Shown: piece after piece, positions 4,826 to 63,763 of the stretch
Numbering within the stretch: the stretch's first letter is position 1
Layout: every line of letters starts with the position of its first letter
IMG/VR virus record: IMGVR_UViG_3300036853_000446
Coordinates: 124,001-188,000 of that record
Direction: 5' to 3' (one strand)
Length of the DNA: 64,000 nt
The notes under the pieces: generated by a model
What the model saw: only the letters and a program-made list of their open reading frames with translations
What the model was told of the DNA's origin: nothing
The model's database searches: none
Translations under genes and position numbers: made by a program

Positions 4826-5032
4826 TCATTCAGCGAGCCGACGAAACAGCTCGGCATGCACGCAGAAGATCTTCTCTTTGGCGGCTTCAAAACGCGCCCG
4901 TTTCACAGCGTCCGCCCGGCTCGACTCCTCGTCGGATGGCTCGACCGGGCGCAGATTCGCGCCCCGGTCAGAGACCACGTGTGCGACCCCGAGCGAGCCA
5001 GGATCGGTGGGGGGTCGACTCGACGGTTTCAA
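4826..5032 (-). CDS. small hypothetical protein
   Basis: TTG start overlapping upstream stop (TTGA). Confidence 0.4.
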   Translation of the reverse strand: MKPSSRPPTDPGSLGVAHVVSDRGANLRPVEPSDEESSRADAVKRARFEAAKEKIFCVHAELFRRLAE

Positions 5033-5271: not shown

Positions 5272-5323
5272 ATCTTTCCTTTCAAATAAACAGACTTGTC
5301 GTTCGTTGTACACCGGGTTCGCC

Positions 5324-7279: not shown

Positions 7280-7289
7280 GGGAATCCTC

Positions 7290-8261: not shown

Positions 8262-8273
8262 GGTTCGATCCCC

Positions 8274-9194
8274 TCAACCGCAGACTGAGGCCAGCGCGGC
8301 CTTCAGATGAAATGAGAGATTGATGGAAGACTGCGCGCGCTCTCGCAAGCTCCTCAACTCGGCGAGCAGTCCGTGCACCGCAAACCTTTTGAGCTGAGTT
8401 TGCAGACGACGAAGTGCATCGATGGCGTCCACGTTCATGACCTTGTTCGGAGCCACATCAATCACCGCGAGGTCCTGGAGCAGTTGCCGCAGGAAGCGGA
8501 TCGCCAGAGGCAGATCGGTCACGTCGTTCACTGCTGAAAACGTGCCGAACAAGTCTTTCGTCGCGGCCAAACTCAGAATGCCGATCATCTCATCTCTCAT
8601 GGTCAACTGACCGGACACGAGGCACCGTATGGCGCGTCCCAGCGAGCCCTCAGCGATACGCGCACACACAAGTGCTTTCGTCTCATCATCCGTGTATTGC
8701 CGCAGTTTGGACAGAATCAGTTCCTCAGGGATTCTTCGGTAGGAAACGACAGCGCATCGAGAACGGATCGTCGGAATCACGGTCTCGAGCTGCTCACTGA
8801 GCAAGAAGAAGCGCACCTTGGCGGGAGGCTCTTCCAGCACTTTCAACAAAGCATTTGCGGCCGCGCTCGTGAGCCTGTTCGCGCCGTCGATGACGAAGAA
8901 TTTCCACGGCGCCCATGACGGCAACGTTTGGGTCTCGTCGATCAAGCCCCTGATGGAATCAACCTTGATGTCCTTGTCATCTTCCACTTCAACAACACGG
9001 AAATCGGGGTGATGCCCGGCTTCCAACGCATAGTGCTGGCTCTCCTCGAAGACCGTTTTTGCAGCCTCGACGATCGACAGCCGCCGGCCCGTCCCCTCTT
9101 CGCCGATCAGAAGAAGCGGGAGCGCAAATGTCCCCTCGGCTACCTGTCGAAGGTAGAAGACTCCTTCAGGTTGTCCGAGCACTGACTCCAGCAC
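8274..9194 (-). CDS. holB: DNA polymerase III delta-prime subunit-like
   Basis: GEEGTGR, HPDF, AANALLKVLEEPP, TIRSRC. Confidence 0.9.
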   Translation of the reverse strand: MLESVLGQPEGVFYLRQVAEGTFALPLLLIGEEGTGRRLSIVEAAKTVFEESQHYALEAGHHPDFRVVEVEDDKDIKVDSIRGLIDETQTLPSWAPWKFFVIDGANRLTSAAANALLKVLEEPPAKVRFFLLSEQLETVIPTIRSRCAVVSYRRIPEELILSKLRQYTDDETKALVCARIAEGSLGRAIRCLVSGQLTMRDEMIGILSLAATKDLFGTFSAVNDVTDLPLAIRFLRQLLQDLAVIDVAPNKVMNVDAIDALRRLQTQLKRFAVHGLLAELRSLRERAQSSINLSFHLKAALASVCG

Positions 9195-9355
9195 AATCAG
9201 CCTCCAATGAATCGTCGACACCGGATGGTTCGACGCGGACGAGCATCACGACGCGGCGATACGCCCCGCGGATCTCACGGACGAAGCGATACGGCTCGCG
9301 GCCGCTCGGGTGCATGGCTTTGCTCGTACACCGAGCGAAGCACCTTCATCGCGAA

Positions 9356-10189
9356 TCAGGTGCTGAATGTTGCGGCGACGCGCCCCTGCTCGACGAGAAA
9401 ATCGTGAATGATCGAGTATGGCTTATCGCACTGCAGCTTGCGCTCGAGCGTCATGCGCAAGGCCAACGCAAACTGAGACTCGACCTTTTCCGCATCGCGG
9501 CACATGAACCAGTAGTTCGACCCCGTAAAATTCTTCACGTAGTCTAAGACGACCGCCTCGGGCACCAAAGCGCTGCGGAGCCACATATAGATGGCCAGGT
9601 TCATCGTGTAACCACGCACCTCCCAATGCGTGCGCCCCTTCGATGCCCACGGCCCGAGGCACACGAGACCAGCGAGCAACACGAACGTCCACCAGCCCGC
9701 GATGAAGATCGAGAGCGCCAACGAGCCCAGAGTAACGAGACCCAAAAAGATCCAGAAGAGAATGCCCGGTCTCGTATCTCTCGCCCCTCGAAGCAATGCC
9801 AGGATGATATACCCGACGAGGAACGCCGCAATGGGCAGGGGGCTCCCGACGACCGCGTGAAGGATGAAGAATGGGATGGCCCAGATTTGAGGTGCCGCAT
9901 AACCGAGTTGAAACCGCGCGCCCGCTTCACGTGAGTCATACATGTGCACGAACTCGTGCGAAAGCGTGACGATGCTCCGGTCAGGCTGTCCGTCGTAACG
10001 TAACCGCGACGGAAAGTAGGCAGTTGACCCGAGAGTTGTCGTGAACACGGTCATGAACGTCGGATTGATTGGACGCATGAGCAGGCCGAGCGCGCGCATG
10101 AGCAACGATTCATCCTTGAACCGGACTTTGAAGGACGGGATCTCCTTCTCTAGCTTTTGCTCGAGCGCCCGGAGGGTTTCCAAGCTCAT
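9356..10189 (-). CDS. Putative HExxH zinc peptidase with inserted membrane segments
   Basis: SHEFVH motif, three to four hydrophobic helices, distal WEVRGY. Confidence 0.6.
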   Translation of the reverse strand: MSLETLRALEQKLEKEIPSFKVRFKDESLLMRALGLLMRPINPTFMTVFTTTLGSTAYFPSRLRYDGQPDRSIVTLSHEFVHMYDSREAGARFQLGYAAPQIWAIPFFILHAVVGSPLPIAAFLVGYIILALLRGARDTRPGILFWIFLGLVTLGSLALSIFIAGWWTFVLLAGLVCLGPWASKGRTHWEVRGYTMNLAIYMWLRSALVPEAVVLDYVKNFTGSNYWFMCRDAEKVESQFALALRMTLERKLQCDKPYSIIHDFLVEQGRVAATFST

Positions 10190-10219
10190 AGAGTCTCCAA
10201 GCTCACAGCGTCTCCAAAC

Positions 10220-10405
10220 TCATAGATGCTGCATGTCCATCTTTCCGCCGACCCGAACTGTGCGCGAGGTGTTGCATTTCACGCAACGATAGAGGCGCGT
10301 CCCCGGCGCGTAGGCGACCTCAACCACCTGAATCGAGTCGCATTTCGGGTTTGTGCACTTCATGAAAACTGGTTTTGGATCGGCGGCGGCTTTGGGAGCT
10401 GTCAT
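10220..10405 (-). CDS. small Zn-ribbon protein
   Basis: CTNPKC and CVKC pairs. Confidence 0.6.
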   Translation of the reverse strand: MTAPKAAADPKPVFMKCTNPKCDSIQVVEVAYAPGTRLYRCVKCNTSRTVRVGGKMDMQHL

Positions 10406-10782
10406 GTGGGCACCTTGTCTGTAAAGAGAAGCCCGAGAATTCCTTGGACTCTGAGATAGAGTGGGTCTCGGGCGTCGACGGTCGAAGACGAAAACCGCAC
10501 CGTGTCGAGAGGCCGCACGGCAGACTCCACGGGCACGAGGCGACTCGTGAGTGTCTCGTCTTTGATGAATGGCAGAATGCGCGCCCAGTCGCTCCGCGGG
10601 ACGGTGACGTTCATGCCGCGCCCGTTGATCTGCACGTAGGCGGAGCCCGCGAGTCGAATGACTCGAGTCGTCGCGTGCCCACGCATCAGAGACGTAAGGG
10701 CTCGCGCCAAGTCTCGCAAGTCGACGTCGAGTATCTGGGACGGCAGCTTGCGCCCCTGAACTCTCGTGAGGCCGTTATCCAC
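10402..10782 (-). CDS. hypothetical protein
   Basis: ATGA overlap with downstream gene. Confidence 0.6.
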   Translation of the reverse strand: MDNGLTRVQGRKLPSQILDVDLRDLARALTSLMRGHATTRVIRLAGSAYVQINGRGMNVTVPRSDWARILPFIKDETLTSRLVPVESAVRPLDTVRFSSSTVDARDPLYLRVQGILGLLFTDKVPT

Positions 10783-10808
10783 CTCCTACGCGGGCGATAG
10801 AAGGAAAG

Positions 10809-12404
<1,596 letters not shown>

Positions 12405-12794
12405 TCAATTTCCCTTCCGAGTACATGGAATGCCATACACCGCCGCGACCTCCACGGGATCGAGGTCCTCGGGATCAGCTATTGTTGACTGCGCGTAACG
12501 GGAAACAGACACCATCGTGGGCCTTGGAGACGAGAAATCCCAACGCGAGCCGGGCGGCGGGGGCGGATGGCCTTTCAACCACAGGTGGCCATAGACGGCG
12601 TAAAGAGCCATCCGTCTATCGACGTGTTCGACCGCGTGCAGAACGTCTTGCGTGGGCTCGACAGATTCGACGCGCGCAAACCACCCGCCATCCAGCCATT
12701 CGCAGACGAATCTCGAACGTTCGGGTATATGAGCGACAATCGCGCGCTCGATTTCGTCGTCGGTCCAAGAGAGGAGTTCGTCAGGCGGTTGCAA
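12405..12794 (-). CDS. hypothetical protein
   Basis: Abuts groEL start; co-directional. Confidence 0.6.
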
Positions 12795-12819
12795 GGCTCA
12801 AAGAGCTGAACCACAAATG

Positions 12820-12856
12820 AAAAAAGCCCCGAGAGGCGTTTCCGTCCCTCGGGGTC
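12820..12856 (-). terminator. Rho-independent terminator after vWA gene
   Basis: CCCCGAG/CTCGGGG stem followed by a T-tract on the minus strand. Confidence 0.75.
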
Positions 12857-12888
12857 TGTGACAGGATCCTGGTTTGTCCGTGGTTTCT

Positions 12889-14400
12889 TTACTTGCCCGA
12901 CGCGGCGGGCTCCACTTCTACGCTCGGGTCTTTGGTCGCGGGCGTCGGGATGACGACGTTGGTCGCAGGGTTCGGCCCGACGAGAGGCTCGGAAGTTGAC
13001 TCGCTCGTGAAGGCCGTCGAATACGCCGCCTGCGCCGAATTCCCGAAGGCCCCATTGCACGTTGCCTTCATGTTCTGGAGTTCGACCTGTGCGACCGAGT
13101 CGTAGCTCGCGACGCCCGCGGAGCGGAGAATACCCTGGCCCATGCTCTTGAGGTATCCTCGGCTCCCGGTGTAGCTCGCTGCATTGCCCATGAAATCGGC
13201 CATGTTGGAGGCCACGTGGGCCTCTGCCACAAGACCTTTGAGCTGCAGGCCTCGCGAGAAATCTGCCAGCTTCGACTGAGCCACCCGATAATCTCCACGA
13301 TTGGCGTCGGCTTCGGCCTCGCGCTGCACGACCGCGAGCTGGTGCAAGGAGACGATTTCGTCGACCGTAGGGGTAGGCGCTTTCTGCGCTTCGTCGGGAC
13401 TCACGAACCGCATCTTGGCGGCCGCCGTCGCCTCCTCCGAAGCCTTTTCCCCCTCCTGCGTGATCCGGCGACAAGTCGCCTTCACGTTGAAGAGCGTGAA
13501 ATCCCGCGGCAGCGCCTTGTCCTGCTTCTTGACGCTGCACTCGAGCACGATGTGCCGCGTCTCTTCGGCCAAAATATCGCCAACCTCGATCGTGACCTCG
13601 GTGATCTCCGCGACACTGGTGACGCCCGTGACACCGGCGGCCGGCGCCTTGTCGGGCCCGAGCAGAGTCACGACCTTCTCGACGGTGTGGCCGTTGCGTG
13701 GCTCGATGACGAGACGGAGGTCCGAGGCGTAGGTCGAGAGCAGGCCACCCAACTCCCGCCCAAACGCCGCCAGAGCGTCGTCCGCATTCTGCACGTAGGC
13801 GTAGTTTCCCTTGCCGAGCTGGCTGAGTTCGGTCAGCAAGTCTTGATCGCACGTGGTTCCCTCTCCGTACCCGAAGAAGCTCATCGAGTGCGAGCCCACG
13901 TGTTTTGCCACGAGACCCTTGATGCTGGTCGCATCGGTGACGCCCGATGTCGGCTGCCCGTCGGTAAAGAAAATCGCTCGCTGCAGAACGTTCGGCGGCA
14001 AGTCGAGGTCGCCGATCTTCGCGAGTGACGACACGATGCTGTCCGAAAAGTTCGTCCCCGCGCTGGCCCACAACTCGTCAATCGCCTTCAGCAGGCGCGT
14101 CTTGAGTTCGGGCGTCACGGGGCCCGGCTTGACCATGGTGCAGACCTGGGAATTGAACGTGATGAGGCCCGAATAGTCCCCCACCTTGAGTTGCTCGACG
14201 AGCTTTCTGCACGCCTGCTTGGCATACTCGAGCTTCCGTCCCTGCATGCTGCCCGAGACGTCGACAACGGGCAGAATGCAGATCCTCGGCCGCCGACTGA
14301 CCCAGTCGATGGCCGGCGCCTCGACGGTCAAGAGCAGATGAACCGTGTTGTCCTTCTCGTGATCAACCGTCTCGTAATCGAACTGCGCTGACAATTTCAT
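12889..14400 (-). CDS. von Willebrand factor A domain protein
   Basis: MIDAS DVSGSM, AGTN, FFTDG, FFGYG. Confidence 0.9.
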   Translation of the reverse strand: MKLSAQFDYETVDHEKDNTVHLLLTVEAPAIDWVSRRPRICILPVVDVSGSMQGRKLEYAKQACRKLVEQLKVGDYSGLITFNSQVCTMVKPGPVTPELKTRLLKAIDELWASAGTNFSDSIVSSLAKIGDLDLPPNVLQRAIFFTDGQPTSGVTDATSIKGLVAKHVGSHSMSFFGYGEGTTCDQDLLTELSQLGKGNYAYVQNADDALAAFGRELGGLLSTYASDLRLVIEPRNGHTVEKVVTLLGPDKAPAAGVTGVTSVAEITEVTIEVGDILAEETRHIVLECSVKKQDKALPRDFTLFNVKATCRRITQEGEKASEEATAAAKMRFVSPDEAQKAPTPTVDEIVSLHQLAVVQREAEADANRGDYRVAQSKLADFSRGLQLKGLVAEAHVASNMADFMGNAASYTGSRGYLKSMGQGILRSAGVASYDSVAQVELQNMKATCNGAFGNSAQAAYSTAFTSESTSEPLVGPNPATNVVIPTPATKDPSVEVEPAASGK

Positions 14401-18767: not shown

Positions 18768-19538
18768 ATGCCTCGTGATCGACTCCGCCCATTCTTCTGC
18801 TATTTCGGTGGCAAGTGGCGTGAGGCTTTGAAAAGCTATCCTGAACCTCGATACGGGACCATCATCGAGCCCTTCGCGGGTGCGGCGGGATTTGCGGCGC
18901 GCTACGCAACTCGCAAAGTAATCCTGTGCGAGATTGACCCCATCATCGCAGCAGTATGGCGGTACCTAATCAAGGTGACGGCCAAAGAGATCTTATCTCT
19001 GCCCGATCTCGTATCGGAAGAGACAGTGGACAATTTGATAGTCAGTCAGGAGGCCAAATGGTTGATTGGCTTTTGGCTCAATAAGGGCACTTCAGGTCCT
19101 CGCAAGAGTCCCTCGACATGGATGCGATCGAATGTTCGGCCGAAGTCATACTGGGGCGCTCATATTCGACAGATCCTGGCATCGCAGGTTGATTCCATCC
19201 GGCACTGGGAAATCCACAACTGCAGCTACGTTGATTGCCCGACCCCACTCGAAGCAACTTGGTTCGTCGACCCTCCCTACGAGGTCGCGGGGCAAGCCTA
19301 CAGATTTGGCTCCAAACAGATCGACTATCAGCATCTCGGTGATTGGTGCCAAACAAGACCCGGACAAGTCATCGTTTGCGAGAACGAAGGAGCAACCTGG
19401 CTTCCTTTTCAGGACCTCGCAAGTGTGAAGGCGAGCCCCAGATCCATTGCGCCAAACCGCCGCTCCAAGGAGGTTTGTTGGTTGAGCACGTTTGAAGAGG
19501 ATGCATACCTGCAAGCCTTCATGCGAGGCGTCGTATGA
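18768..19538 (+). CDS. Dam-like N6-adenine DNA methyltransferase
   Basis: YFGGK, EPFAG, FVDPPY. Confidence 0.85.
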   Translation: MPRDRLRPFFCYFGGKWREALKSYPEPRYGTIIEPFAGAAGFAARYATRKVILCEIDPIIAAVWRYLIKVTAKEILSLPDLVSEETVDNLIVSQEAKWLIGFWLNKGTSGPRKSPSTWMRSNVRPKSYWGAHIRQILASQVDSIRHWEIHNCSYVDCPTPLEATWFVDPPYEVAGQAYRFGSKQIDYQHLGDWCQTRPGQVIVCENEGATWLPFQDLASVKASPRSIAPNRRSKEVCWLSTFEEDAYLQAFMRGVV

Positions 19539-46711: not shown

Positions 46712-47078
46712 TCGCGAGCACATATCCCGGATTTTACTCATCGATGACGAGGATCTCATCGTGCGAGCCGTGCGTCGGATGCTCGAGGCCGAGACTCAAT
46801 TCGAGATCTGCTCCGCCTGTGACGGTGAGACCGGCCTCGTGGCATTTGAAACGGAGCCCCCGTTCGACGTCCTGATCACGGACATCCATCTACCGGATAT
46901 GTCTGGCACCACGCTAGCTCGAAAGCTTCGCATTCTGAAGCCGGACCTGAAGATCATTTTCATGTCGGGCGCCATCCCAACCGATATCGATCCGTCGGCG
47001 GGAACCCTAACGAAGCCCTTCCGCCACGATGACCTGATGCACGCTTTGGAAAACGCTTTGGAGTCAAGACGTCTCTAG
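46692..47078 (+). CDS. Single-domain CheY-like response regulator receiver
   Basis: ILLIDDE, LITDIHLPDMSG, IIFMSG, TKPF; start uncertain. Confidence 0.88.
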   Translation: MATTATDREHISRILLIDDEDLIVRAVRRMLEAETQFEICSACDGETGLVAFETEPPFDVLITDIHLPDMSGTTLARKLRILKPDLKIIFMSGAIPTDIDPSAGTLTKPFRHDDLMHALENALESRRL

Positions 47079-48077
47079 GTATCGGGCCGCCACGCGCCGA
47101 CTCGCGTTCGTGCGACGGTCGATCAAGGTGGCCGCGTGCTCGAACGTGCTCGCGTCCCATTCGTCCCAGTGGGGTAAACTCGCCAAGGCCACCTTACGGC
47201 TTCTCAAGACCTCGAGGACCTGTTCCACGGCATCCTCGACCGTGGCACTGATGCCCTTCACGTCGCAGTCCGTGGAGAACTGCGCGTAGAAATCTCGGAA
47301 AGAGTCAATTATATCGCGGCATTTGAAGACGGCATCTTCTAGGCGCGACGGGACCACCGCGGCGTCGTCATCGCTACTGACCGAAAGGGCGAGCAGCTCG
47401 TTGAGGCGTCCCGACTCTTTATCGAGTTCCTTGTACACGTCCATATACTTGCCGAACTCCACGCAAAGGCTTGTCAGACCCACGACGCTGATCAGCTTTT
47501 TTGCCGCGGTCGTGCGTTTGCTCAAACCTTTCAGTTTGGAACTCGCCCGTGACGCCTGCTCCAAGACGGCTTTTGAGCCTCGGACGATGTCCTGCATGCG
47601 CCGCTGTCTCTTGCCGGTCGTCGTCTTGACGGCCAACTCCGCAAAGTCGTGCAGCTCGTCCACGGTGTCAGCAAAGTCGTCCTTGAGATATTCACGCAGA
47701 TCGACCCGCCAGGAAAGATAGAGATGGCTGATTTCTCTGACCGTCCTCTCGAAAGCGGTCGTGGCACGTTGCTTGGCCTCTTTGATGGTGGCCAAGTCGA
47801 TGCGCCGCTGACTCGTGTCCGTCCCCACCTCCGTACGGTCGTTGACCCGCTTGCCCTCGAGGACCTCTTTGGCCACGTTGATCTCGACCATCATCGTTGG
47901 GCTCCCACCGCGGTCGGGATGGTGCTCTTTAGCTTTCGATTTCCACGCCTTGTTGATCTCGGCATCCGAGGGGCTCGAGCCAGGCGGGAAGCCGAGCACG
48001 TCCTTGGCCTCCTCGAGCGTCATTGCCGTCCGGAGCCATCGGGCGGCGGTCTGGTAAGCGTCATGGCGGTGTGGCAT
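47064..48077 (-). CDS. DnaJ J-domain protein with AARWL leader and RVAARYL tail
   Basis: AKDVLGF..INKAWKSKAKEHHPDRGG. Confidence 0.85.
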   Translation of the reverse strand: MPHRHDAYQTAARWLRTAMTLEEAKDVLGFPPGSSPSDAEINKAWKSKAKEHHPDRGGSPTMMVEINVAKEVLEGKRVNDRTEVGTDTSQRRIDLATIKEAKQRATTAFERTVREISHLYLSWRVDLREYLKDDFADTVDELHDFAELAVKTTTGKRQRRMQDIVRGSKAVLEQASRASSKLKGLSKRTTAAKKLISVVGLTSLCVEFGKYMDVYKELDKESGRLNELLALSVSSDDDAAVVPSRLEDAVFKCRDIIDSFRDFYAQFSTDCDVKGISATVEDAVEQVLEVLRSRKVALASLPHWDEWDASTFEHAATLIDRRTNASRRVAARYLETS

Positions 48078-48185
48078 GGATCCTCGTAAGGACACGGCCT
48101 ATAAGAGGTTCCGACGCTCAGAACCCTGGGGACGGCGCCTCCACGGCTCTAGCTTTTCGCGTCCACGGCCGGCGTGCAGGTCGCC

Positions 48186-48530
48186 TCAACGCTTCAAGCT
48201 CAACACGAGCCTCAACCCCGAATCCAGATCTTGAATCTGACGCTTTGGCAGTGTCCCGATCCGCTTGTCAAAGAGCGACTTGTCGATGGTCATGACCTGG
48301 CACACCAGGATGACGGAGTCCTTCTTCAGACCACTCGTTTTCGTGTCGAGTCGGACATTGCCCACAGCAAGAGCGCGCTGCAGATTGGACGTGATGGGAG
48401 CAACCATCACGGTCGAAAGGCGACTGTCGGTCAATAAATCATCCTGCACTATGACAACCGGACGTTCGAACGCGGGAGCCGACCCTTTGGGCTCGCCGAG
48501 ATCGACATACCAGATCTCACCACGCTTCAT
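48186..48530 (-). CDS. mazF: MazF/PemK-family endoribonuclease toxin
   Basis: KRGEIWYVDL..RPVVIVQ..VAPITS..CQVMTIDK. Confidence 0.92.
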   Translation of the reverse strand: MKRGEIWYVDLGEPKGSAPAFERPVVIVQDDLLTDSRLSTVMVAPITSNLQRALAVGNVRLDTKTSGLKKDSVILVCQVMTIDKSLFDKRIGTLPKRQIQDLDSGLRLVLSLKR

Positions 48531-48766
48531 TCCTCGGTCCAATCGACCGCCAGCAAGGCCTTGCGGGCAGCTTGGCGCCGCAGCTCGTCCTCGTCGCCGT
48601 CCGCAAATGCCGCGTCATAGGACGCCTTGACGCTCGCTTCGAGGCTGGTCGCCAGGTACGCTTTGACCGCCCGCGTGAAGAACTCGCTCCGAGACATGCC
48701 GAGCTGCGCAGCGGTCGCTTCCGCTTCCTCGAATACCTCGTCCGGAATCGAGATTGCAGTCTTCAT
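48527..48766 (-). CDS. Ribbon-helix-helix antitoxin
   Basis: MKTAISIPDEVF..LGMSRSEFF; ATGA overlap with toxin. Confidence 0.88.
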   Translation of the reverse strand: MKTAISIPDEVFEEAEATAAQLGMSRSEFFTRAVKAYLATSLEASVKASYDAAFADGDEDELRRQAARKALLAVDWTEE

Positions 48767-48773
48767 CGACCGA

Positions 48774-48791
48774 GTATAACTCCAGTTATAC
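48774..48791. promoter_or_regulatory. TA operator palindrome
   Basis: GTATAAC-TCCA-GTTATAC just upstream of antitoxin start. Confidence 0.75.
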
Positions 48792-48864
48792 CTCCCGTCA
48801 AGGCGGGCGACGCTGCCAAAAGCGGCCCACCGAGGCTTGAGCCCAACGTGAGGCTCTCCTTGCC

Positions 48865-51843
48865 TCACTCTCCGCGGCCCATGGCGAAATCATGCAGGTC
48901 TTCCGCGTCCTTCTTCTCCTGGTCCTGCCGCATGACGATCTCGAGGCGCCGCACGGCCTCCGCGTGGTTCGTCGGGTCGCGCTCCATGCCGATGAAATGC
49001 ATCCCCTCGAGCACGGCCGCGTGGAGCGTAGTACCCGAGCCGGCGTACATGTCCAGCACCGTGCCGCCTTTTTGTGTGACGAGCTTGACCAACCATCTGA
49101 TGAGCGCCAAGGGCTTCAACGTGGGGTGTTGAATTTCGAACTCGCCGCAGCCGGCTTCTTTACGGTTGGCCTTCGGAATATAGCGGAATGGCACGCCGCC
49201 CTGCGCGTCGAACTGAGTAAAGAACCGATCCACGCCGCCCTCGTCCGTGAGCCGGGTTCCGGCTTTGAACTGAAAATCAGCCATGTCCGTTCCCCTTTCC
49301 GCTAAGCCCTTGTTTTCAGTCGAGCCACCATTCGGGTGATGTCCTGACTCGACCCCCTGCTCCCGTAGCGCCCTGACGGGGCATCCTTCCACGCAAATCC
49401 AGTCTTCTACCGTTTCCAGGCCGTCGGGACCCGCGTAGCGCTGACTAGGCGTTTCCTTGGGCTGCCACCCGTCGTCGTTCATTATTCCGAGGGCCTCTAA
49501 CCGCCGCTTGCCACCGGGTGGGGTTTTGACGTCCTTCAGCCCGACGCGCTCACAGCCCGGGGCGTGAATGAACACAGCGTTCGGAGGCCATCTGCCTTTG
49601 CTAGCATCCTCGTCGGATTTGTCGGCCTCGAACTGGGTGAAGAAGCGAGAAGCACCGCCGGCATCCTGGTACGTGACATGATCATGCGCAGCCTGTGCAC
49701 CATCTGAGAAGGCGCCATTCTTCCCCTCGTAATTGAAATCGACGTGAACTTCCGAGGGGTCGTTGTTTGGGGAAGTGTATGAGCTGCGACGCTCGCCGCT
49801 CTGATCGTCGAGGGCCTTCACCGGACATCCTTCCACGCAGATCCAGTCGGCCACTTCCTCCTTCCCATCGAATCCAGCGTAACCGAGTTCGTCGCCTTCG
49901 ATGATGTTGTCCCCGTGCCACCCCCCTGTGTAGCCTGCCTTTGTACGGCCTTTACCCGTACAAAGAGACTTAGTGGTCACACGCTTAATGCCGACGCGCT
50001 GGCACCCCGCTCGACCTTCAACGTCTGGGACGTGTTCGAATACGGCGTTCGAAGGCCACCTGCCTTTGCTCTGGTCCTCGTCGGGTTTGTCGGCTTCGAT
50101 TTGGGTAAAAAACCGCGAGGCGCCCCCCTCATCGTCGTAGAGGGGGCCCTGGGTGTTGTGACCGAGATCCCCTCGTGTGTAACCACCACCACGGCTGTAC
50201 GTGGTTGGATAGTTGCCCGAGGATCGCCGATTACCGCTCTGATCGTCGAGGGCCTTCACCGGACATCCTTCCACGCATTCCCAGGCCTCCGTCTCTTCAA
50301 GGCCGTCCGAACCAACGTGGCTCGTTGTCTGCTGGTACTCAAAGCTCCCGTAGACGACCCTCGAGGGGGCCACATACTTCTTGTCCGGTACAGGTTCGCC
50401 TTTGGCTGCCGCCGCATGTGAACCTTTGATCCTCTTCGACCCGATGCGCTGGCAACCCGGGCGTCCGTCAGCATCGGGGACGTGCTCGAGCAGGACGTTG
50501 CTCGGCCACCTACCTTTGCTCGCATCCTGAGAATCTGCCTCGATCTGCGTGAAGAACCGCGAGGCCCCGCCGGCATCCGCGTAGACTTTGCTCAGGTGCG
50601 TTCGCTCCCCGAGGAACGTGGACGTAGGGTTCATCTCCGTGCCCGGGTGCTCGTGGCTCACGTCCGGGTCCGCGCGCCCCGTCAGCGTGCTCGGCCGATC
50701 GCCGCTCATGGCGTCTAGGGCACGTACAGGGCATCCTTCGGCGCATTCCCAGGCCTCGACCGTTTCGTTGCCGTCGTCATCGCCATAGCCACCACCACGT
50801 TCCTGAACCTGTGGCTGCCAGCCATCGTCGTTCATTTTGCCCAACGCACTATGCCGACGAGTTCCCTGCATGATGGCCGCAACCTTTTTTGACCCGACAC
50901 GCTGGCAACTCTCGGAATGTTCGAGCACGACGTTGCTCGGCCACCTTCCGCCGGCCTTGACCTCGTTGGCGCCGCTGAGGTCGCTGTCGTTCTTCCACGA
51001 TTTATCCCGGCTGCCGCCCTTCTCACGGATGGCATCGACGCCCTTCTTGTGGGTCTCGAAATCTTCCTGCGAGGCGTGCCGCACGCGGGTGGCGTCGATG
51101 TTGAGCCCGCCCGTCCCGTGCTTCAGGACGTTCGACGCGAGCGTGCCCTCGAGCGGCTTGCGGAAGACCAAAATTGGCTCAAATGCAGGCTTGAGTCCAC
51201 TCCCCCACCCAGACCAATGTTTGGCCTCGTCGGATGCTGGCGCGTACTGGTGGTGATATTTCTCGACCTGCTCTGGGTCCTTCATCCAAGGCCGAGAGAA
51301 CCCCACAGCGTGAGGGCCCGATTCGGAGAGATTTACGACGCTAGAGTTGTTACCCCGATCAGCAAATTCCTCGTGACCCGGCTTGATCCCAACCAGCTGC
51401 GTGCGCGTCTTCCCGAACCGATTGTCGATGCCTTTGCTTATATCATGGCTCTTTGGCATGCCCTGACCCTGAATCCATTGCAATATCGGATAGTTACGAC
51501 CGATCGTGTCGCGGCATTCGAACCCCGCCATTCGAAGCCCGATGCTAATCAGGTCGAACGTTCTTGTTCCTCCGAACGAGAGCACGTGACCGCCGGGCTT
51601 GAGCACGCGGTAGACCTCGCGCCAAACGGCAACGCTCGGAATGCTCCATTTTTGGCCCATGAAGTCATTTCCAGTGTCGAGCGTGCATCCGAGCACGTAC
51701 GCAAAGATGTCCTCCGGCGACGGGTCCTTGTTCCCGAGCCCATATGGCGGATCTACAACGGTGGCATCTATTGAATCCGAAGGAAGGTCACGGAGAAGGT
51801 CGAGACAATCACCGAGAAGAATCTGATCGAGAGGGAGGTCCAC
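48865..51843 (-). CDS. Beta-class N4/N6 DNA methyltransferase, 992 aa, with internal repeats
   Basis: DPPYG N-terminal; HPTLKP..LDMYAGSGTT C-terminal. Confidence 0.9.
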   Translation of the reverse strand: MDLPLDQILLGDCLDLLRDLPSDSIDATVVDPPYGLGNKDPSPEDIFAYVLGCTLDTGNDFMGQKWSIPSVAVWREVYRVLKPGGHVLSFGGTRTFDLISIGLRMAGFECRDTIGRNYPILQWIQGQGMPKSHDISKGIDNRFGKTRTQLVGIKPGHEEFADRGNNSSVVNLSESGPHAVGFSRPWMKDPEQVEKYHHQYAPASDEAKHWSGWGSGLKPAFEPILVFRKPLEGTLASNVLKHGTGGLNIDATRVRHASQEDFETHKKGVDAIREKGGSRDKSWKNDSDLSGANEVKAGGRWPSNVVLEHSESCQRVGSKKVAAIMQGTRRHSALGKMNDDGWQPQVQERGGGYGDDDGNETVEAWECAEGCPVRALDAMSGDRPSTLTGRADPDVSHEHPGTEMNPTSTFLGERTHLSKVYADAGGASRFFTQIEADSQDASKGRWPSNVLLEHVPDADGRPGCQRIGSKRIKGSHAAAAKGEPVPDKKYVAPSRVVYGSFEYQQTTSHVGSDGLEETEAWECVEGCPVKALDDQSGNRRSSGNYPTTYSRGGGYTRGDLGHNTQGPLYDDEGGASRFFTQIEADKPDEDQSKGRWPSNAVFEHVPDVEGRAGCQRVGIKRVTTKSLCTGKGRTKAGYTGGWHGDNIIEGDELGYAGFDGKEEVADWICVEGCPVKALDDQSGERRSSYTSPNNDPSEVHVDFNYEGKNGAFSDGAQAAHDHVTYQDAGGASRFFTQFEADKSDEDASKGRWPPNAVFIHAPGCERVGLKDVKTPPGGKRRLEALGIMNDDGWQPKETPSQRYAGPDGLETVEDWICVEGCPVRALREQGVESGHHPNGGSTENKGLAERGTDMADFQFKAGTRLTDEGGVDRFFTQFDAQGGVPFRYIPKANRKEAGCGEFEIQHPTLKPLALIRWLVKLVTQKGGTVLDMYAGSGTTLHAAVLEGMHFIGMERDPTNHAEAVRRLEIVMRQDQEKKDAEDLHDFAMGRGE
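49200..50950 (-). repeat. Four tandem ~140-150 aa modules in the methyltransferase
   Basis: GRWP(S/P)N x4, WxCxEGCPV x4, GGASRFF x3 plus GGVDRFF. Confidence 0.9.
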
Positions 51844-51880
51844 CCCGGCTCATACACCGGCGGGCGCGCGCCACCGTTCG

Positions 51881-52072
51881 TCAGACTTCCGATTCGACTT
51901 TTCGTTTGCCCCTGCGCGACCCAAGGCGATCGATGATGCGAACCGCCATGACGCCGAAGGCGAAGCCGTAGAGGCTCGTGACCCCGATGGCCGCCACCGT
52001 CTGGTAGTCACCGGTGCCGATGAAGTACCCGACGTTGGCCGTGAAGCTCGCGATGTAGCCGACCTTGAGCAT
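51881..52072 (-). CDS. small membrane protein
   Basis: Two hydrophobic segments, basic tail; start uncertain. Confidence 0.45.
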   Translation of the reverse strand: MLKVGYIASFTANVGYFIGTGDYQTVAAIGVTSLYGFAFGVMAVRIIDRLGSRRGKRKVESEV

Positions 52073-52215
52073 CGAGACCGGCGGCGGCGCTCGAAGCCAC
52101 GACCACCGGCGGACCTTCAGCTCCCCGGGCTTCTTCGTCTCCTTGGCGCGCCGTCTCACCCGGAGGCTGAGGGGCACGCGCAAGGGGCTTCCACGGCGGC
52201 TCCAGCGATGCACCC

Positions 52216-53530: not shown

Positions 53531-54826
53531 ATGAACAGAAAGGCAATGGCATTGAAGGTCGCGCGGGCGTGGTTGCGACGTGCTGCGGTCGTGCCCGATG
53601 ACCTCTTTGATCGATATTCACATCAATTGAAGGGGATCCTTTCCGGTCCCACCTCAGGGCCACGCAGCGTCGCACAGATGATTCGCAAGGGCATCGAGCC
53701 GTTGTTCCATCAGTTCGTGCATGATCTCCGCGAGACTGGGCTTACACGAAACCTCCTCGCGCATGTCGTTCGCAATCTCAATGCCGACCTGAAGATCCTG
53801 AAAGAGATTGAGACGAACCTCGAAAACCTGCACATCGCAATGACCTGCCCGCAGGGTGACGACAAATATTTGCCCGAGCACGAGATCAAGTGCCGCCTTG
53901 CCAGTGTGTTGAAAGATTGGTTCGACAACAGCGTCAAAACAATCGACCAAGCCCTTTTAGAGAACTGGTCGGTACGCTCCATAGGTGCAACCGGCCTCGT
54001 TGACCAGATCCTGAAGCAGGCCAGCCCGAAAGAATTGTCGATGCTCGGGGCTGTTGCGAACGGAGATGAGTCGACGGAGGTCCTTCAGCAACTGCGCGCC
54101 TTCAACGTGCGCGCTGTCGACCCCCTCGCCAAGAAACTCGTCATCAAAAACTGGCTCGGCGACGACAATTGGTGGCTCGGCCTGTTTGACCAAGTGAAGC
54201 GTAATCTCACCCACGAATCCGCCACCGATAGACCCGATGAGCAATTCGACCTTCACGGGATGAAGGTCGTCGTCGACGACGATACGGTGAACGCGGCTGA
54301 TATCCGTGCCTATGTTAAATACTTCGATATCGCCTATCAGAGCCTGAAGTCGAGGCGACTCCACTCGGCGTGGTACGGCGACATACTGATCGATTGCAAA
54401 GGCTGCGGGGGAGTCATCGATACGGGCGCAAATATTGGTGGCCACTTCAACGTCGGAAAGGATCAGGTCACGATCTTTGCTCGACCCGGCCCGACGATCA
54501 GCTACATTGTGGTACATGAGCTTGGACACCGGTACTGGTTCAAGAGCTTGTCGCGAGGCCAGCGCGGCAAGTTCGAATCCCTCGTAAAGGTGAAGGGCGA
54601 CGGCGCCAAGCCGGTCCTTCCCGTCTCTGACTACGGTGCTTCAAACATCGACGAAGCGTTTGCCGAGGCATTCGCCTGGTATGTCCTCCGCCGGAAGATG
54701 AACGCCGATCAAGAGGCTTCATTCAAGGCGGTCCTGCTCGACAAGGATCGCCGCTCCGTCACGTCCAAAACGGCGTCGAGATCGACGAGCGCCGCAAGAC
54801 GAGTCAGACGACCTCGATCTTCCTGA
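53531..54826 (+). CDS. Zincin metallopeptidase (LF/MPTase-like) with KVARAWL leader
   Basis: VVHELGHRYW, SDYGASNIDEAFAEAF. Confidence 0.8.
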   Translation: MNRKAMALKVARAWLRRAAVVPDDLFDRYSHQLKGILSGPTSGPRSVAQMIRKGIEPLFHQFVHDLRETGLTRNLLAHVVRNLNADLKILKEIETNLENLHIAMTCPQGDDKYLPEHEIKCRLASVLKDWFDNSVKTIDQALLENWSVRSIGATGLVDQILKQASPKELSMLGAVANGDESTEVLQQLRAFNVRAVDPLAKKLVIKNWLGDDNWWLGLFDQVKRNLTHESATDRPDEQFDLHGMKVVVDDDTVNAADIRAYVKYFDIAYQSLKSRRLHSAWYGDILIDCKGCGGVIDTGANIGGHFNVGKDQVTIFARPGPTISYIVVHELGHRYWFKSLSRGQRGKFESLVKVKGDGAKPVLPVSDYGASNIDEAFAEAFAWYVLRRKMNADQEASFKAVLLDKDRRSVTSKTASRSTSAARRVRRPRSS

Positions 54827-55604
54827 CCTTCACATTCCGTGGGTTGAACACGGCGATCTCCGGCACGCCTTGGACGAGGTTGGTGCCGTAGAAAAAGACC
54901 GAGTCATACCCTTTTGATCGCGCTTTACGAGCCTGGCTCGTGCTCTTCGTGACCAGCGGATTGCTGACAGTCACCGCCACCGTATAGACCTTCGGGCGGT
55001 ACGTTTTAGAATCCAGGCCGAGCGCGTCGAGGTTGTCATAAACATAGTCGGGAGCGCCCGTAGAGGAATTCATCAACTCGTCGAGCACCGAGTCCGTCTC
55101 GGACCCGAGGGGCTTCACTTTGCTGCCGATGATGTATGCGGCCAGGTCGCTCACGGCGTTGGGGTCGACGCCGAGGTAGTCCTCGAAGCCGACGAGGTCG
55201 ACATGTCCCTCTCCCGGGCCCGGATTCTCTCGCCAGAAACCGGCATCCTGGAGGGCGCGCGTCCACCCGCCGTCTCCGTGCTCGACGAGCATCTCGAGGA
55301 ATCTGCCGGCGGCCGGTTTCCTCCGCTTCAGGTCCGCGACGATCGTGGGCGAGAAGCCTATGTTACGGTTCGCGTAGGCGTACTCGCCGGCAACCCGCTT
55401 GCTCGGGGTCAGGAAGATCCCTCTGCCGTAATAGCTGTCGACCAGTTCGTCGCGGCTCTGACCCATGTCGAAGCTGCGAAAGAGCCGCGTCGTGCCGTGG
55501 TAAAGGGTCACCGGATGGCCCGTGCGAAGGCCCTCCAGATGGTACTCGACGAGAGGATCTACGGTCTCGCGCGCGACCCGGCGATCGTAATCGTAGGCCA
55601 GCAC
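54804..55604 (-). CDS. ADP-ribosyltransferase-like protein with YDYDRR leader
   Basis: LYHGT, GRGIFLT, A.EYA, GYDSV, EIAVFNP. Confidence 0.75.
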   Translation of the reverse strand: MLAYDYDRRVARETVDPLVEYHLEGLRTGHPVTLYHGTTRLFRSFDMGQSRDELVDSYYGRGIFLTPSKRVAGEYAYANRNIGFSPTIVADLKRRKPAAGRFLEMLVEHGDGGWTRALQDAGFWRENPGPGEGHVDLVGFEDYLGVDPNAVSDLAAYIIGSKVKPLGSETDSVLDELMNSSTGAPDYVYDNLDALGLDSKTYRPKVYTVAVTVSNPLVTKSTSQARKARSKGYDSVFFYGTNLVQGVPEIAVFNPRNVKVRKIEVV

Positions 55605-62650: not shown

Positions 62651-63763
62651 CTACTTCCTTTTGGTCGGCTCGGGCTTTTTGGCGTCGGCTTCCACAGCGA
62701 GGGTTTCGGCAGCGGTCGAAATCGAAGCGGCGGCCTGTGCAATCGAATCGGCGGCCTGTGCAATAGACTCTGCCGCCTCGGTGCGGCCCGCTATATTGTC
62801 CGCTCGAGGTGGCTTGTTCGCCTTGAGCTTGGCTGTAGCAGGGCCCACTTTCACTTTAGCGGGGCCCACTAAGGTTGGCTCCGCCCTTATGACGGACGTC
62901 ACCGCGACAGGTTCCACTGTGATCGGCTTTACCACCTTGGCGGGCTCAGTCCTTATGGTCGGCGCCACTGCGGCGGGCGCCACTGCGACGGGCTCCACTG
63001 CGACGGGCTTGACCACCTTGGTGGGCTCTGCCCTTATGGTCGGCTCCACCACGGCGGGCTCCACTGCGACGGGCTCAACCACGGCGGGCTCCCGGGTCCA
63101 GCCTCCGGAAATCTGTAGCGAGGCATCTTCCTCGTTGTCCTGATTCCAACGACGGAGCACGGCGTTCGACAGCTTGACGGTTTCCGCGTGGATACTGTCC
63201 TCGACGTTCTGGGACCACGTGCCCAGGATGGCCAATCCAATGATGGACACGATTGCCGTGAACAAGCCGAACGCGGTGCAGTTCATGGCTTCGGAGATAC
63301 CCTCAGCGAGGATCCTCGATTTTTGCGTGTAGTCTACGCTCTCGGCACCCACGGAACCAAACGATTTTATGAGCCCCAGGATGGTCCCAAAGAGTCCGGA
63401 AAGCATTGCGAGATTCGCATAGAGGGCGAGGTACCGCACGCCCCGATGGATGAGCGGCAGCTCGTACAGCGCCACCTCGTCCATCCCCGCTTCGAAGGCT
63501 TTGATTCCGCGGGAGGCTCTCGCGAGTCCGCCGCGGGTGATGCGCCCAAGGGGCGTCTTGGCGGCTGCAGCAAGTCGAATGGCTCGGCTCCAGTCGCCGG
63601 CCTCGACGAGCTTCGTAATCGTTGCCGTAAAAACGTTGACCTCCTGATATGCCGAGAACAAGTAGAGGGTCTTCCAACAGAAGCCGTAAGCCACGGCGCC
63701 GAGCCAGAAAAGAATGGGCCACATCGCCCAGCCTCCCGCCCTGAAATGCTCGAGGAGGGTCAT
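62651..63763 (-). CDS. MotA/TolQ/ExbB proton-channel protein with repetitive Pro/Val/Ala tail
   Basis: GGWAMWPI, GLFGTILGLIKSF, GISEAMNCTAFGL; ~25-aa EP-rich repeats. Confidence 0.9.
   Translation of the reverse strand: MTLLEHFRAGGWAMWPILFWLGAVAYGFCWKTLYLFSAYQEVNVFTATITKLVEAGDWSRAIRLAAAAKTPLGRITRGGLARASRGIKAFEAGMDEVALYELPLIHRGVRYLALYANLAMLSGLFGTILGLIKSFGSVGAESVDYTQKSRILAEGISEAMNCTAFGLFTAIVSIIGLAILGTWSQNVEDSIHAETVKLSNAVLRRWNQDNEEDASLQISGGWTREPAVVEPVAVEPAVVEPTIRAEPTKVVKPVAVEPVAVAPAAVAPTIRTEPAKVVKPITVEPVAVTSVIRAEPTLVGPAKVKVGPATAKLKANKPPRADNIAGRTEAAESIAQAADSIAQAAASISTAAETLAVEADAKKPEPTKRK

What the first reader, a model, noticed from the sequence alone, without database searches (positions are those of the whole stretch)
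48865..51843. 992-aa methyltransferase with four tandem His/Cys modules
Between DPPY and the C-terminal SAM-binding motif are four ~140-150 aa units: GRWP[SP]N..H..C.R.G.K-[variable]-W.C.EGCPV.AL-[variable]-GG[AV][SD]RFF. The H/C/C/C set suggests one Zn site per unit. The variable loops differ between units, like swappable target-recognition modules. Related phage MTases, from memory, carry one GRWP..GGASRFF unit. Inference: a multispecific MTase built by module amplification, or a recombination-driven specificity reservoir.
Basis: partly seen in the sequence, partly recalled or inferred. Interest (0 to 1): 0.72.

Follow-up and report, generated by a model that had tools for sequence, protein, structure and literature searches.

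The report
Phage methyltransferase with four reader modules
A giant soil phage encodes an intact DNA methyltransferase whose DNA-reading slot holds four different copies of an undescribed metal-binding module, where most relatives have one, so a single enzyme may mark several DNA sequences to evade host restriction; this has not been tested.

Summary
Window 48865-51843 (minus strand) is one open 992-aa frame encoding a beta-class DNA amino-methyltransferase. It scores 93 bits against PF01555 and its split core matches CcrM at Z 24.6. Between the two core halves lie four complete modules of 143-156 aa.

Each module has the same frame: GRWP..H-x3-C, a variable loop, W.C.(E)GCPV, a second variable loop, then GG(A/V)xRFF. 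The His and three Cys are invariant in 150 modules from relatives. The modules share 42-44% protein identity and are old, not a recent duplication.

The module matches no Pfam or NCBIfam family and no solved structure. In an unbiased set of viral loci, 79 frames carry one complete module, two carry two, and none carries three or more. The nearest relative has 3.5.

Modules fall into position-specific lineages, and loop types occur in different combinations among relatives. The best reading is a multispecific, probably N6-adenine, anti-restriction methyltransferase, the amino-methyltransferase counterpart of the Bacillus-phage multi-TRD C5 enzymes (confidence about 0.5).

A "specificity reservoir" is not supported: the 407-kb genome holds no other copies. 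An assembly artefact is unlikely. The metal and the target sequences are untested.

The parts
48865..51843 (-). Complete 992-aa ORF (GTG start) encoding a beta-class DNA amino-methyltransferase with a four-module insertion
   Evidence: open frame. PF01555 at 93.3 bits against a cut-off of 26.7; phrog_67 DNA methyltransferase at 5e-55.
50959..51843 (-). N-terminal half of the catalytic core (residues 1-295). It holds motif IV DPPY (residues 31-34, nt 51742-51753), the strand EPILVFRK (221-228) and the family motif GTGGLNID.
   Evidence: sequence; pLDDT mostly 84-98; aligns to CcrM, MboIIA, BceJIV and RsrI.
50521..50958 (-). Unit 1 (residues 296-441), with proposed ligands H309, C313, C367 and C371. 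Its C-half loop is the type conserved at 77-95% identity in the first unit of relatives.
   Evidence: beta-beta-alpha core at E314-322, E359-366 and H372-379.
50071..50520 (-). Unit 2 (residues 442-591), with proposed ligands H454, C464, C523 and C527. Its N-half loop is the same type as the third unit of P0002 and the single units of P0020 and P0022.
49603..50070 (-). Unit 3 (residues 592-747), with proposed ligands H604, C614, C669 and C673, plus one extra Cys (C628) in the loop. Its C-half loop is the same type as loops in P0002, P0004 and P0010.
49174..49602 (-). Unit 4 (residues 748-890), with proposed ligands H760, C764, C817 and C821. It groups with the last units of relatives. Its N-half loop is related to that of unit 1 (57% identity).
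48865..49173 (-). C-terminal half of the catalytic core (residues 891-992). It holds HPTLKP (906-911) and SAM-binding motif I AGSGTT (about 934-939, nt 49027-49044).
   Evidence: PF01555 stretch at 898-961. RsrI and CcrM match residues 902-966; pLDDT 86-97.
49796..49839 (.). Copy in unit 3 of the only exact repeat of 20 nt or more in the gene (44 nt), lying over the CPV anchor.
   Evidence: a Logan contig ends at 49825, inside this repeat.
50234..50277 (.). Copy in unit 2 of the 44-nt exact repeat, 438 nt (146 codons, in frame) from the other copy. This is a likely recombination footprint and a possible site of unit gain or loss.
   Evidence: a Logan contig starts at 50248, inside this repeat.
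48527..48868 (-). Downstream ribbon-helix-helix protein (antitoxin-like). Its longest frame overlaps the methyltransferase stop by 4 nt.
   Evidence: RHH_1. VapB-family antitoxin, below cut-off; coordinates.
48186..48542 (-). PemK/MazF-like toxin, next gene downstream on the same strand.
   Evidence: PF02452 at 93.8 bits; phrog_1936.

Best explanation
The gene encodes an intact beta-class DNA amino-methyltransferase, probably N6-adenine-specific because motif IV is DPPY. It belongs to a phage of about 0.4-0.47 Mb from soil.

The catalytic fold is split. Residues 1-295 carry motif IV and residues 891-992 carry motif X and motif I. The slot between them, where this class carries its target recognition domain, holds four complete and diverged copies of an uncharacterised module of about 145 aa.

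Each module is a small beta-beta-alpha knuckle held by an invariant His-x3-Cys ... Cys-x3-Cys-Pro set. This most likely binds one zinc ion, or possibly an Fe-S cluster. The knuckle carries two long variable loops.

I infer that the loops read DNA. On that reading, each module gives the single catalytic core a different target sequence. The phage would then methylate several motifs with one protein and escape several host restriction systems. This is the amino-methyltransferase counterpart of the multispecific C5 enzymes of Bacillus phages.

The array was built stepwise, long ago, by unit-length in-frame recombination between the conserved anchor segments.

Shown here: the ORF, the motifs, the four modules, the invariant ligands, the split fold, the rarity of four copies, and the mosaic loop types.

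Inferred: DNA reading by the loops, multispecificity, the identity of the metal, N6-adenine chemistry and the anti-restriction role.
For: Core identity:
- PF01555 scores above its cut-off.
- The split core aligns to CcrM, MboIIA, M.BceJIV and RsrI at Z 21-24.6, over model residues 3..979.
- In class beta the order is motif IV, then TRD, then motif I (PMC7544214), so the array sits in the TRD slot.

The modules:
- There are four complete modules, each with E from 1e-34 to 1e-45.
- His, Cys, Cys and Cys are invariant in 150 modules.
- Each module has a confidently predicted beta-beta-alpha core, and its loops are predicted with low confidence.

Copy number in relatives:
- It ranges over 1, 1.5, 2, 3 and 3.5; only this protein has 4.
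- Among frames from 77 IMG/VR loci, 79 have one complete module, two have two, and none has three or more.

Loop types:
- Loop types are discrete and recombined among relatives. P0002's third module pairs the N-loop type of unit 2 here with the C-loop type of unit 3 here.
- First modules share a C-loop at 77-95% identity, but their N-loops are only 25-47% identical.

Lineages:
- Units 2 and 3, and unit 4, fall into well-supported position-specific lineages shared with other phages (SH-aLRT 100 and 98). Unit 1 sits with relatives' first units without good support.
- This suggests each position has been maintained separately.

Context:
- The genome also carries another PF01555 enzyme, a C5 enzyme and Dam-like enzymes, so it invests heavily in methylation.
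- The precedent for arrayed TRDs in phage methyltransferases is given in PMC12707154 and PMC7544214, citing Trautner 1996 and Walter 1992.
Against: - There are no functional data of any kind.
- The modules are acidic (pI 4.9-5.6), and the loops are poorly predicted.
- The first module's C-loop is so conserved across relatives that it may be structural rather than a specificity element.
- The whole-protein model gives low confidence to the first GRWP segment and to the segment around the last RFF. How four modules share one core is therefore unresolved.
- Beta-class enzymes work as dimers with divided labour (PMC7544214), which may constrain the geometry.
- Some relatives carry half modules that lack the His and the first Cys, so a module's parts are not always autonomous.
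- The AU test does not reject a tree in which the four modules form one clade (p = 0.19).
Confidence: 0.5

Rival explanations
1. Single specificity with cooperating modules. The four modules act together, either reading one long or composite site or adding general DNA affinity, sliding or processivity. CcrM's extra C-terminal domain does the latter. On this reading, copy number tunes affinity rather than the number of targets.
For: - All four modules are intact and sit in one polypeptide.
- Beta-class enzymes are known to use additional DNA-binding parts and to divide labour in a dimer (PMC7544214).
- The loops are flexible in the models.
Against: - The modules are acidic (pI 4.9-5.6), which is unlike non-specific DNA clamps.
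- Relatives work with 1, 1.5, 2 or 3 modules, and loop types are reshuffled. This fits independent cassettes better than one composite reader.
Confidence: 0.25
2. Only one module is the working target reader, namely the first or the last, which are the two conserved positions. The middle modules would be spacers or relics, or would bind something other than DNA, such as a phage or host protein.
For: - Unit 4 belongs to a well-supported lineage of relatives' last units, and unit 1 sits with their first units, though without good support.
- The first module's C-loop is 77-95% conserved, whereas the other loops are 36-59% identical to their best matches.
- Truncated half modules exist in relatives.
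Against: - Units 2 and 3 keep every invariant framework residue and all four ligands.
- Units 2 and 3 have recognisable counterparts in other phages (SH-aLRT 100 clade). This argues for selection rather than decay.
Confidence: 0.15
3. Recombination-driven specificity reservoir or phase variation. On this reading the array is rearranged frequently in the phage population to switch targets.
For: - One 44-nt exact repeat joins units 2 and 3 in frame, 438 nt apart.
- An exchange between the two copies would remove exactly one unit. The resulting hybrid would be of the kind seen in P0002.
Against: - There are no other unit copies or silent cassettes in the 407-kb genome.
- There are no inverted arrangements.
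- DNA identity between units is otherwise only about 64%.
- The contig-level data show no alternative joints.
Confidence: 0.05
4. Assembly artefact. On this reading the true gene has three units, and the 438-nt piece between the two 44-nt repeats was placed there wrongly.
For: Logan contigs of the source run break exactly at the two 44-nt repeats, and no listed contig spans them.
Against: - Breaks at a 44-nt exact repeat are expected if Logan's contigs were assembled from short words; I assumed a word length of 31, which no tool output states. On that assumption they are not evidence of error.
- The middle piece is unique sequence, in frame, and encodes a complete set of framework residues.
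- All of the middle piece's sampled words are present in the same run.
- The middle piece can only sit between two copies of the repeat, so it implies a tandem arrangement wherever it lies.
- The units are otherwise too diverged to be confused with each other.
Confidence: 0.05

Closest known systems
Single-module phage and plasmid beta-class 'DNA methylase' proteins of the same family (for example in Mycobacterium, Gordonia and Arthrobacter phages, and the 533-aa ORF of huge phage LR745208)
   Same: - The same split PF01555 core.
- The same GTGxLNID, GRWP, H..C, W.C..GCPV, GGASRFF and HPTxKP framework.
   Different: These proteins carry one module (79 of the viral frames), whereas this protein carries four complete ones. 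I found no paper that characterises the module or the targets of this family. None of the four literature searches looked for the module by its motifs, so the gap may lie in the searches.
Multispecific C5-cytosine methyltransferases of Bacillus phages (SPR, phi3T, rho11s; Trautner 1996 and Walter 1992, as cited in PMC7544214 and PMC12707154)
   Same: - A phage enzyme with one catalytic core.
- Several tandem modules in the variable region between catalytic motifs.
- A conserved frame with variable content.
- Plasticity in the number of modules.
   Different: - Different chemistry and fold class: PF00145 with a PC motif, against PF01555 with DPPY.
- Their TRDs are much shorter and are not known to bind metal (my recollection; not checked in a paper here), whereas these modules are about 145 aa with a His/Cys3 site.
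- Separate specificities are demonstrated for those enzymes and only inferred here.
CcrM, M.BceJIV, M.MboIIA and M.RsrI (solved beta-class N6-adenine methyltransferases)
   Same: The catalytic fold (Z 21-24.6), the motif order and, probably, the N6-adenine chemistry.
   Different: Those enzymes have short recognition loops or a separate C-terminal DNA-binding domain. None has a His/Cys module or tandem modules. The module alone has no match among solved chains.
Ferredoxin-type 4Fe-4S motifs (Pfam Fer4 families)
   Same: The C-x3-C-P-V-x-A-L segment resembles the end of the CxxCxxCxxxCP motif (sub-threshold hits).
   Different: - Only two of the four ferredoxin cysteines are present in that segment.
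- All Fer4 hits fall below the gathering scores.
- The other two ligands (His-x3-Cys) lie about 50 residues upstream.

Membership tests
Beta-class DNA amino-methyltransferase (Pfam N6_N4_Mtase, PF01555) | Pfam model matched above its gathering score | tested here: met
   93.3 bits against a cut-off of 26.7, in two stretches (N-terminal and residues 898-961). One search finds the same two pieces in the genome.
Beta-class DNA amino-methyltransferase (Pfam N6_N4_Mtase, PF01555) | Motif order: catalytic motif IV (D/S-P-P-Y/F) lies N-terminal to SAM motif I (FxGxG), with the TRD between them | tested here: met
   DPPY at 31-34 and AGSGTT at about 934-939. The class definition is in PMC7544214.
Beta-class DNA amino-methyltransferase (Pfam N6_N4_Mtase, PF01555) | Seven-stranded methyltransferase fold superposable on solved class members | tested here: met
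   CcrM 6pbd at Z 24.6 with 230 residues aligned; MboIIA at 23.5; BceJIV at 23.0; RsrI at 21.3.
Beta-class DNA amino-methyltransferase (Pfam N6_N4_Mtase, PF01555) | SAM-dependent methylation of adenine N6 or cytosine N4 in DNA | not testable with these tools
   DPPY and the best structural matches favour N6-adenine, but this is an inference.
Multispecific phage methyltransferases (Bacillus phage SPR/phi3T type) | C5-cytosine chemistry (PF00145, PC motif) | tested here: not met
   One search shows no PF00145 match. The enzyme is an amino-methyltransferase, so it is not a member of that family, although it may work like one.
Multispecific phage methyltransferases (Bacillus phage SPR/phi3T type) | Several tandem modules with a conserved frame and variable content in the region between catalytic motifs | tested here: met
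   (four modules). (variable loops of discrete types).
Multispecific phage methyltransferases (Bacillus phage SPR/phi3T type) | Each module confers its own DNA target | not testable with these tools
   This needs methylome mapping of the wild type and of module deletions.
Zinc-knuckle or treble-clef-like metal site | Four conserved ligands, placed on a beta hairpin and at the start of a helix | tested here: met
   His and three Cys invariant in 150 modules; strand, strand, then a helix starting just after the last Cys.
Zinc-knuckle or treble-clef-like metal site | Bound zinc | not testable with these tools
   The complex-prediction job with Zn was not folded. No coordinates were available to measure the ligand geometry.
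Ferredoxin-type 4Fe-4S domain (Pfam Fer4 clan) | CxxCxxCxxxCP motif, or a Pfam hit above the gathering score | tested here: not met
   Fer4_16 at 25.2 bits against 30, Fer4_7 at 17.1 against 27, and Fer4 at 16.1 against 21.1. Only C-x3-CP is present.
Recombination-switched specificity systems (shufflon or hsdS-type reservoirs) | Additional silent or inverted cassettes that can be exchanged into the expressed gene | tested here: not met
   the module profile finds only the four in-gene copies in the 407-kb record; the gene holds a single 44-nt direct repeat.

The most novel reading that the evidence does not exclude
This would be the first multispecific amino- (N6-adenine) DNA methyltransferase. 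One beta-class catalytic core would be served by four independent target-reading cassettes of a previously undescribed His/Cys3 metal-binding fold. The two loops of each cassette would encode the target, and phages would exchange cassettes naturally by recombination at conserved anchor segments. If so, the family would form a modular, engineerable code for methylation specificity.
Probability: 0.35. Interest if true: 0.78.

Novelty: new variant of a known kind. Interest (0 to 1): 0.6.

Why it matters
Phage orphan methyltransferases are a main route of escape from restriction. The only cited case of one enzyme carrying arrayed target readers is the C5 family of Bacillus phages (PMC12707154).

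An amino-methyltransferase built on the same principle would show that multispecificity evolved twice, on different folds. It would also help explain how huge phages with broad or uncertain host ranges protect very large genomes.

The module is widespread in phage and plasmid methyltransferases. The representative search gave about 30,000 hits to the whole protein at E up to 0.001, mostly to the core. Most of the 253 retrieved relatives carry at least one module.

The module has no Pfam or NCBIfam model and no solved structure. Defining it would improve annotation and prediction of targets. Natural cassette swapping would also offer a scaffold for engineering methylation specificity.

Tried and rejected
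- **Tandem Repeats Finder.** It found no unit-length DNA repeat in the gene. The units are too diverged, which argues against a recent duplication.
- **Genome-contig scan with the whole protein.** It found no relatives. The viral scan with the whole protein found one distant locus. The 150-unit alignment was too diverse to seed a scan; a 19-unit alignment worked.
- **PDB search by sequence.** Only the catalytic core matched.
- **Fold searches with the unit-only model.** Foldseek on the PDB gave nothing with E of 0.001 or better. VIA-align against 48,161 chains gave nothing with Z of 2 or more. This does not prove a new fold, because the ordered core is only about 40-50 residues.
- **Complex prediction of unit 1 with Zn.** The job was not folded and gave no verdict. 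It is no evidence either way.
- **Read evidence.** Only Logan contigs were available. They match the window exactly on both sides but leave a hole at 49826-50247. A second look-up shows that the hole's words are in the same run. Copy-number variation at read level could not be assessed.
- **AU test of 'all four units form one clade'.** Monophyly was not rejected (p = 0.19), so the position-specific lineages rest on the SH-aLRT clades only.
- **Loop clustering.** Single-linkage clustering of loop types lumped too many loops together, because the conserved flanks were included. I relied on the trimmed pairwise identities instead.
- **Literature searches.** They found no description of this module or of a multispecific beta-class enzyme. 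Absence from the searchable library is not proof of absence.
- **Intein domains.** Pfam did not confirm inteins in the large insertions of P0254, P0011, P0002 and P0031.
- **ESM Atlas.** It gave only viral hypothetical proteins and methylases as neighbours of the unit. These are leads, not tests.
Full report
**1. What is there**

Window 48865-51843 holds one uninterrupted 992-aa frame on the minus strand, starting with GTG. The closest homologue, P0002, aligns from residue 2, which supports that start.

The protein matches Pfam N6_N4_Mtase (PF01555) at 93.3 bits against a cut-off of 26.7. The match is in two separate pieces, one N-terminal and one at residues 898-961. It also matches PHROG 67, 'DNA methyltransferase'.

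Catalytic motif IV, DPPY, lies at residues 31-34. HPTLKP is at 906-911, and the SAM motif AGSGTT is at about 934-939. That order, with motif IV before motif I and the target recognition domain between them, defines class beta amino-methyltransferases (PMC7544214).

**2. The four units**

GRWP occurs at residues 299, 444, 594 and 750. EGCPV occurs at 369, 525, 671 and 819. RFF occurs at 429, 577, 733 and 873.

Cut at those marks, the units are 296-441, 442-591, 592-747 and 748-890. They align at 42-44% identity to unit 1. One His and three Cys are among the invariant framework columns in each unit.

At the DNA level the units are about 64% identical, and Tandem Repeats Finder reports no unit-length repeat. 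A profile made from 150 units of relatives finds exactly these four places in the whole 407-kb genome, with E from 1e-34 to 1e-45, and nothing else.

**3. The unit as a structural element**

Across 150 units from many proteins, the only invariant columns are the G and R of GRWP, the His, the three Cys and the R of RFF.

The AlphaFold model of the whole protein has a mean pLDDT of 62.5. Its catalytic core is confident. In each unit there is a confident strand-strand-helix element, for example E314-322, E359-366 and H372-379 in unit 1. The two long loops fall below pLDDT 50.

A unit-only model built on the 150-unit alignment reaches pLDDT 74 and shows the same elements. The first Cys starts strand 1. 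The second Cys ends strand 2. The third Cys, followed by Pro, starts the helix. This is the layout of a small metal knuckle.

Zinc is the simplest reading of the metal. However, the C-x3-C-P-V-x-A-L segment gives sub-threshold hits to ferredoxin-type models, so a cluster with three Cys and one His cannot be excluded. The attempt to co-fold with Zn was not run by the tool.

The unit has no Pfam or NCBIfam family and no relative among solved structures by sequence. It also has no structural match by Foldseek or by an exhaustive VIA-align search.

**4. Where the array sits in the fold**

Against the PDB, the whole model superposes on several solved beta-class enzymes:
- CcrM (6pbd), Z 24.6, 230 residues aligned.
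- M.MboIIA, Z 23.5.
- M.BceJIV, Z 23.0.
- M1.HpyAVI, Z 22.8.
- M.RsrI, Z 21.3.

The aligned range in the model runs from residue 3 to about 979. The core is thus built from residues 1-295 and 891-992, and the roughly 595 residues of the array are an insertion between them, in the TRD slot.

The first GRWP segment and the segment around the last RFF have low confidence in the four-unit model. How the units dock on the core is therefore unresolved.

**5. Copy number in relatives**

A search of 1.84 billion representatives gave 29,899 hits at E up to 0.001. A word-indexed search restricted to long proteins gave 124.

Scanning the 253 retrieved proteins with a unit profile gave these counts:
- 137 with one complete unit.
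- 30 with one complete unit plus a C-terminal half unit.
- 25 with two units.
- A handful with three.
- One with three and a half (P0002; 64% identical, 1164 aa).
- Only this protein with four.

That sample is biased towards long proteins, so I took an independent one. It comprised 77 IMG/VR viral loci found through two short framework patterns. Among their frames:
- 79 have one complete unit.
- Two have two.
- Five have one complete unit plus partial units.
- None has three or more.

A single-unit 533-aa version sits in the 485-kb phage LR745208. A two-unit version sits in a 372-kb viral contig (L017).

**6. How the array was built**

Trimmed loop comparisons show discrete loop types combined differently in different proteins:
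- The C-half loop of unit 1 recurs at 77-95% identity in the first unit of eight close relatives. Their N-half loops are only 25-47% identical to unit 1's.
- P0002's third unit pairs the N-loop type of unit 2 here (46%) with the C-loop type of unit 3 here (49%).
- The N-loops of units 1 and 4 are related to each other (57%) and to the second unit of P0006 (53-59%).

A maximum-likelihood tree of 150 units gave the following placements:
- Unit 1 sits with the first units of ten relatives, but no branch above it is well supported.
- Units 2 and 3 fall in a clade with middle or second units of P0002, P0004, P0007 and P0008 (SH-aLRT 100).
- Unit 4 groups with the last units of five relatives (SH-aLRT 98).

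The AU test does not reject a single clade of all four units (p = 0.19). The stepwise, position-specific history is therefore the better-supported reading but is not proven.

The only exact repeat of 20 nt or more inside the gene is 44 nt long, at 49796-49839 and 50234-50277. It lies over the CPV anchors of units 3 and 2, and the copies are 438 nt (146 codons) apart. Given about 64% identity elsewhere, this looks like a footprint of recombination or gene conversion. An exchange between the two copies would remove exactly one unit in frame.

**7. Is it an assembly artefact?**

Run X1 is a soil metagenome and probably the source sample. Its Logan contigs match the window without a single difference over 48500-49825 and 50248-52200. 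They stop exactly inside the two 44-nt repeats.

That is what assembly from short words does at an exact 44-nt repeat; I assumed a word length of 31 for Logan's contigs, which no tool output states. The piece in between was not listed, but all of its sampled words are present in the same run.

The piece is unique, in frame, and can only lie between two copies of the repeat. I put the artefact reading at about 5%. The read data came only as contigs, so variation in copy number within the population could not be examined.

**8. Context**

The window is part of a 407,634-bp IMG/VR virus record that CheckV estimates to be 86% complete. The window also encodes the following:
- a RecD-like helicase,
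- an NAD-dependent ligase,
- a class II ribonucleotide reductase,
- a GroEL-type chaperonin,
- a VWA protein,
- a MotA/ExbB-like protein.

This is the gene set of a huge phage.

The genome carries at least one more PF01555 enzyme, which lacks the unit. It also carries a C5 methyltransferase and two or three Dam-like genes.

The methyltransferase gene is followed on the same strand by a ribbon-helix-helix gene that overlaps its stop. A PemK/MazF-like toxin gene comes next.

**9. Mechanism: best reading and rivals**

The best reading (confidence about 0.5) is that each unit is a target-reading cassette. On this reading the single catalytic core methylates several sequences, which protects the phage DNA from several restriction systems. 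The following support it:
- the position in the TRD slot;
- complete conservation of the framework in all four units;
- discrete, reshuffled loop types;
- position-specific lineages kept in different phages;
- the precedent of Bacillus-phage C5 enzymes that array several recognition domains (PMC12707154, PMC7544214).

Against it:
- there are no functional data;
- the units are acidic (pI 4.9-5.6);
- the loops are poorly modelled;
- the very high conservation of the first C-loop may be structural;
- half units occur in relatives.

The rivals are:
- cooperative reading of one site, or added DNA affinity (0.25);
- only one working unit, with the others serving as spacers or binding something else (0.15);
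- a rapidly recombining reservoir (0.05; no spare cassettes);
- an assembly artefact (0.05).

**10. Comparison with known families, and novelty**

The protein is a member of the beta-class amino-methyltransferases; all testable features are met. It is not a member of the multispecific C5 family, because the chemistry and fold differ, although it may work like one. The unit is not a ferredoxin-type domain by Pfam criteria.

Single-unit family members are common and are annotated only as 'DNA methylase'. I found no description of the unit itself, or of a beta-class enzyme with arrayed readers, in the searchable literature.

I rate the finding as a new variant of a known kind, with interest 0.6. 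The enzyme class and the anti-restriction logic are familiar. The four-cassette architecture on an amino-methyltransferase, and the undescribed metal-binding module, are not.

Noticed in passing
window 48186-48868 (minus strand): A ribbon-helix-helix (antitoxin-like) gene overlaps the methyltransferase stop codon by 4 nt. A PemK/MazF-like toxin gene follows and overlaps it by 16 nt. This looks like a toxin-antitoxin pair co-transcribed with the methyltransferase in a huge phage.
   Followed up: partly
window 54804-55604 (minus strand): A 266-aa ORF matches ART-PolyVal (ADP-ribosyltransferase of polyvalent proteins) at 44.6 bits, above the cut-off of 31.2. It is a possible host-takeover or counter-defence enzyme near the methyltransferase.
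   Followed up: no
window 47064-48095 (minus strand): A 343-aa ORF has an N-terminal DnaJ (J-domain) match just below the Pfam cut-off, plus matches to phage families of unknown function.
   Followed up: no
genome G000:C1 96317-97210, 330798-331280, 351570-352298 and 220612-221136 (outside the window), and 142837-143001 (window 18837-19001): The same phage genome encodes a second PF01555 methyltransferase without the module, a C5 methyltransferase and two strong Dam-like (MethyltransfD12) matches. A third, weak Dam-like match at 142837-143001 lies inside the window and falls below the Pfam cut-off.
   Followed up: partly
proteins P0026 and P0248 (relatives): Two relatives repeat a larger block three times; the block runs ARKPL, GTGSLNID, GRWP, module, RFF. 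After the repeats comes a core-like part in which the DPPY position reads DTEHWP or DTEHFP. They may be catalytically inactive, permuted methyltransferase-like proteins with three reader modules, perhaps recognition partners.
   Followed up: partly
proteins P0002, P0031, P0011 and P0254 (L017:1932-4640): Several relatives carry large insertions inside conserved motifs.
- In P0031 the insertion lies inside the CPV anchor.
- In P0002 it lies between motif X and motif I.
- In P0011 and P0254 it lies inside the N-terminal core.

Pfam did not recognise intein domains in these four. Other family members do carry precomputed Hint, LAGLIDADG or Intein_splicing annotations (P0057, P0081, P0107, P0109).
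   Followed up: partly
window 3-14400: This stretch encodes a RecD2-like helicase, an NAD-dependent DNA ligase with BRCT, a B12-type ribonucleotide reductase, a GroEL-type chaperonin and a VWA-domain protein. A MotA/ExbB-like gene lies at 62651-63763.
   Followed up: no
ESM Atlas neighbours of P0001 residues 442-591: The nearest clusters are all-viral 'hypothetical proteins' of 88-140 aa. The module, or fragments of it, may therefore also exist as separate small ORFs in phages. This was not verified by alignment.
   Followed up: no
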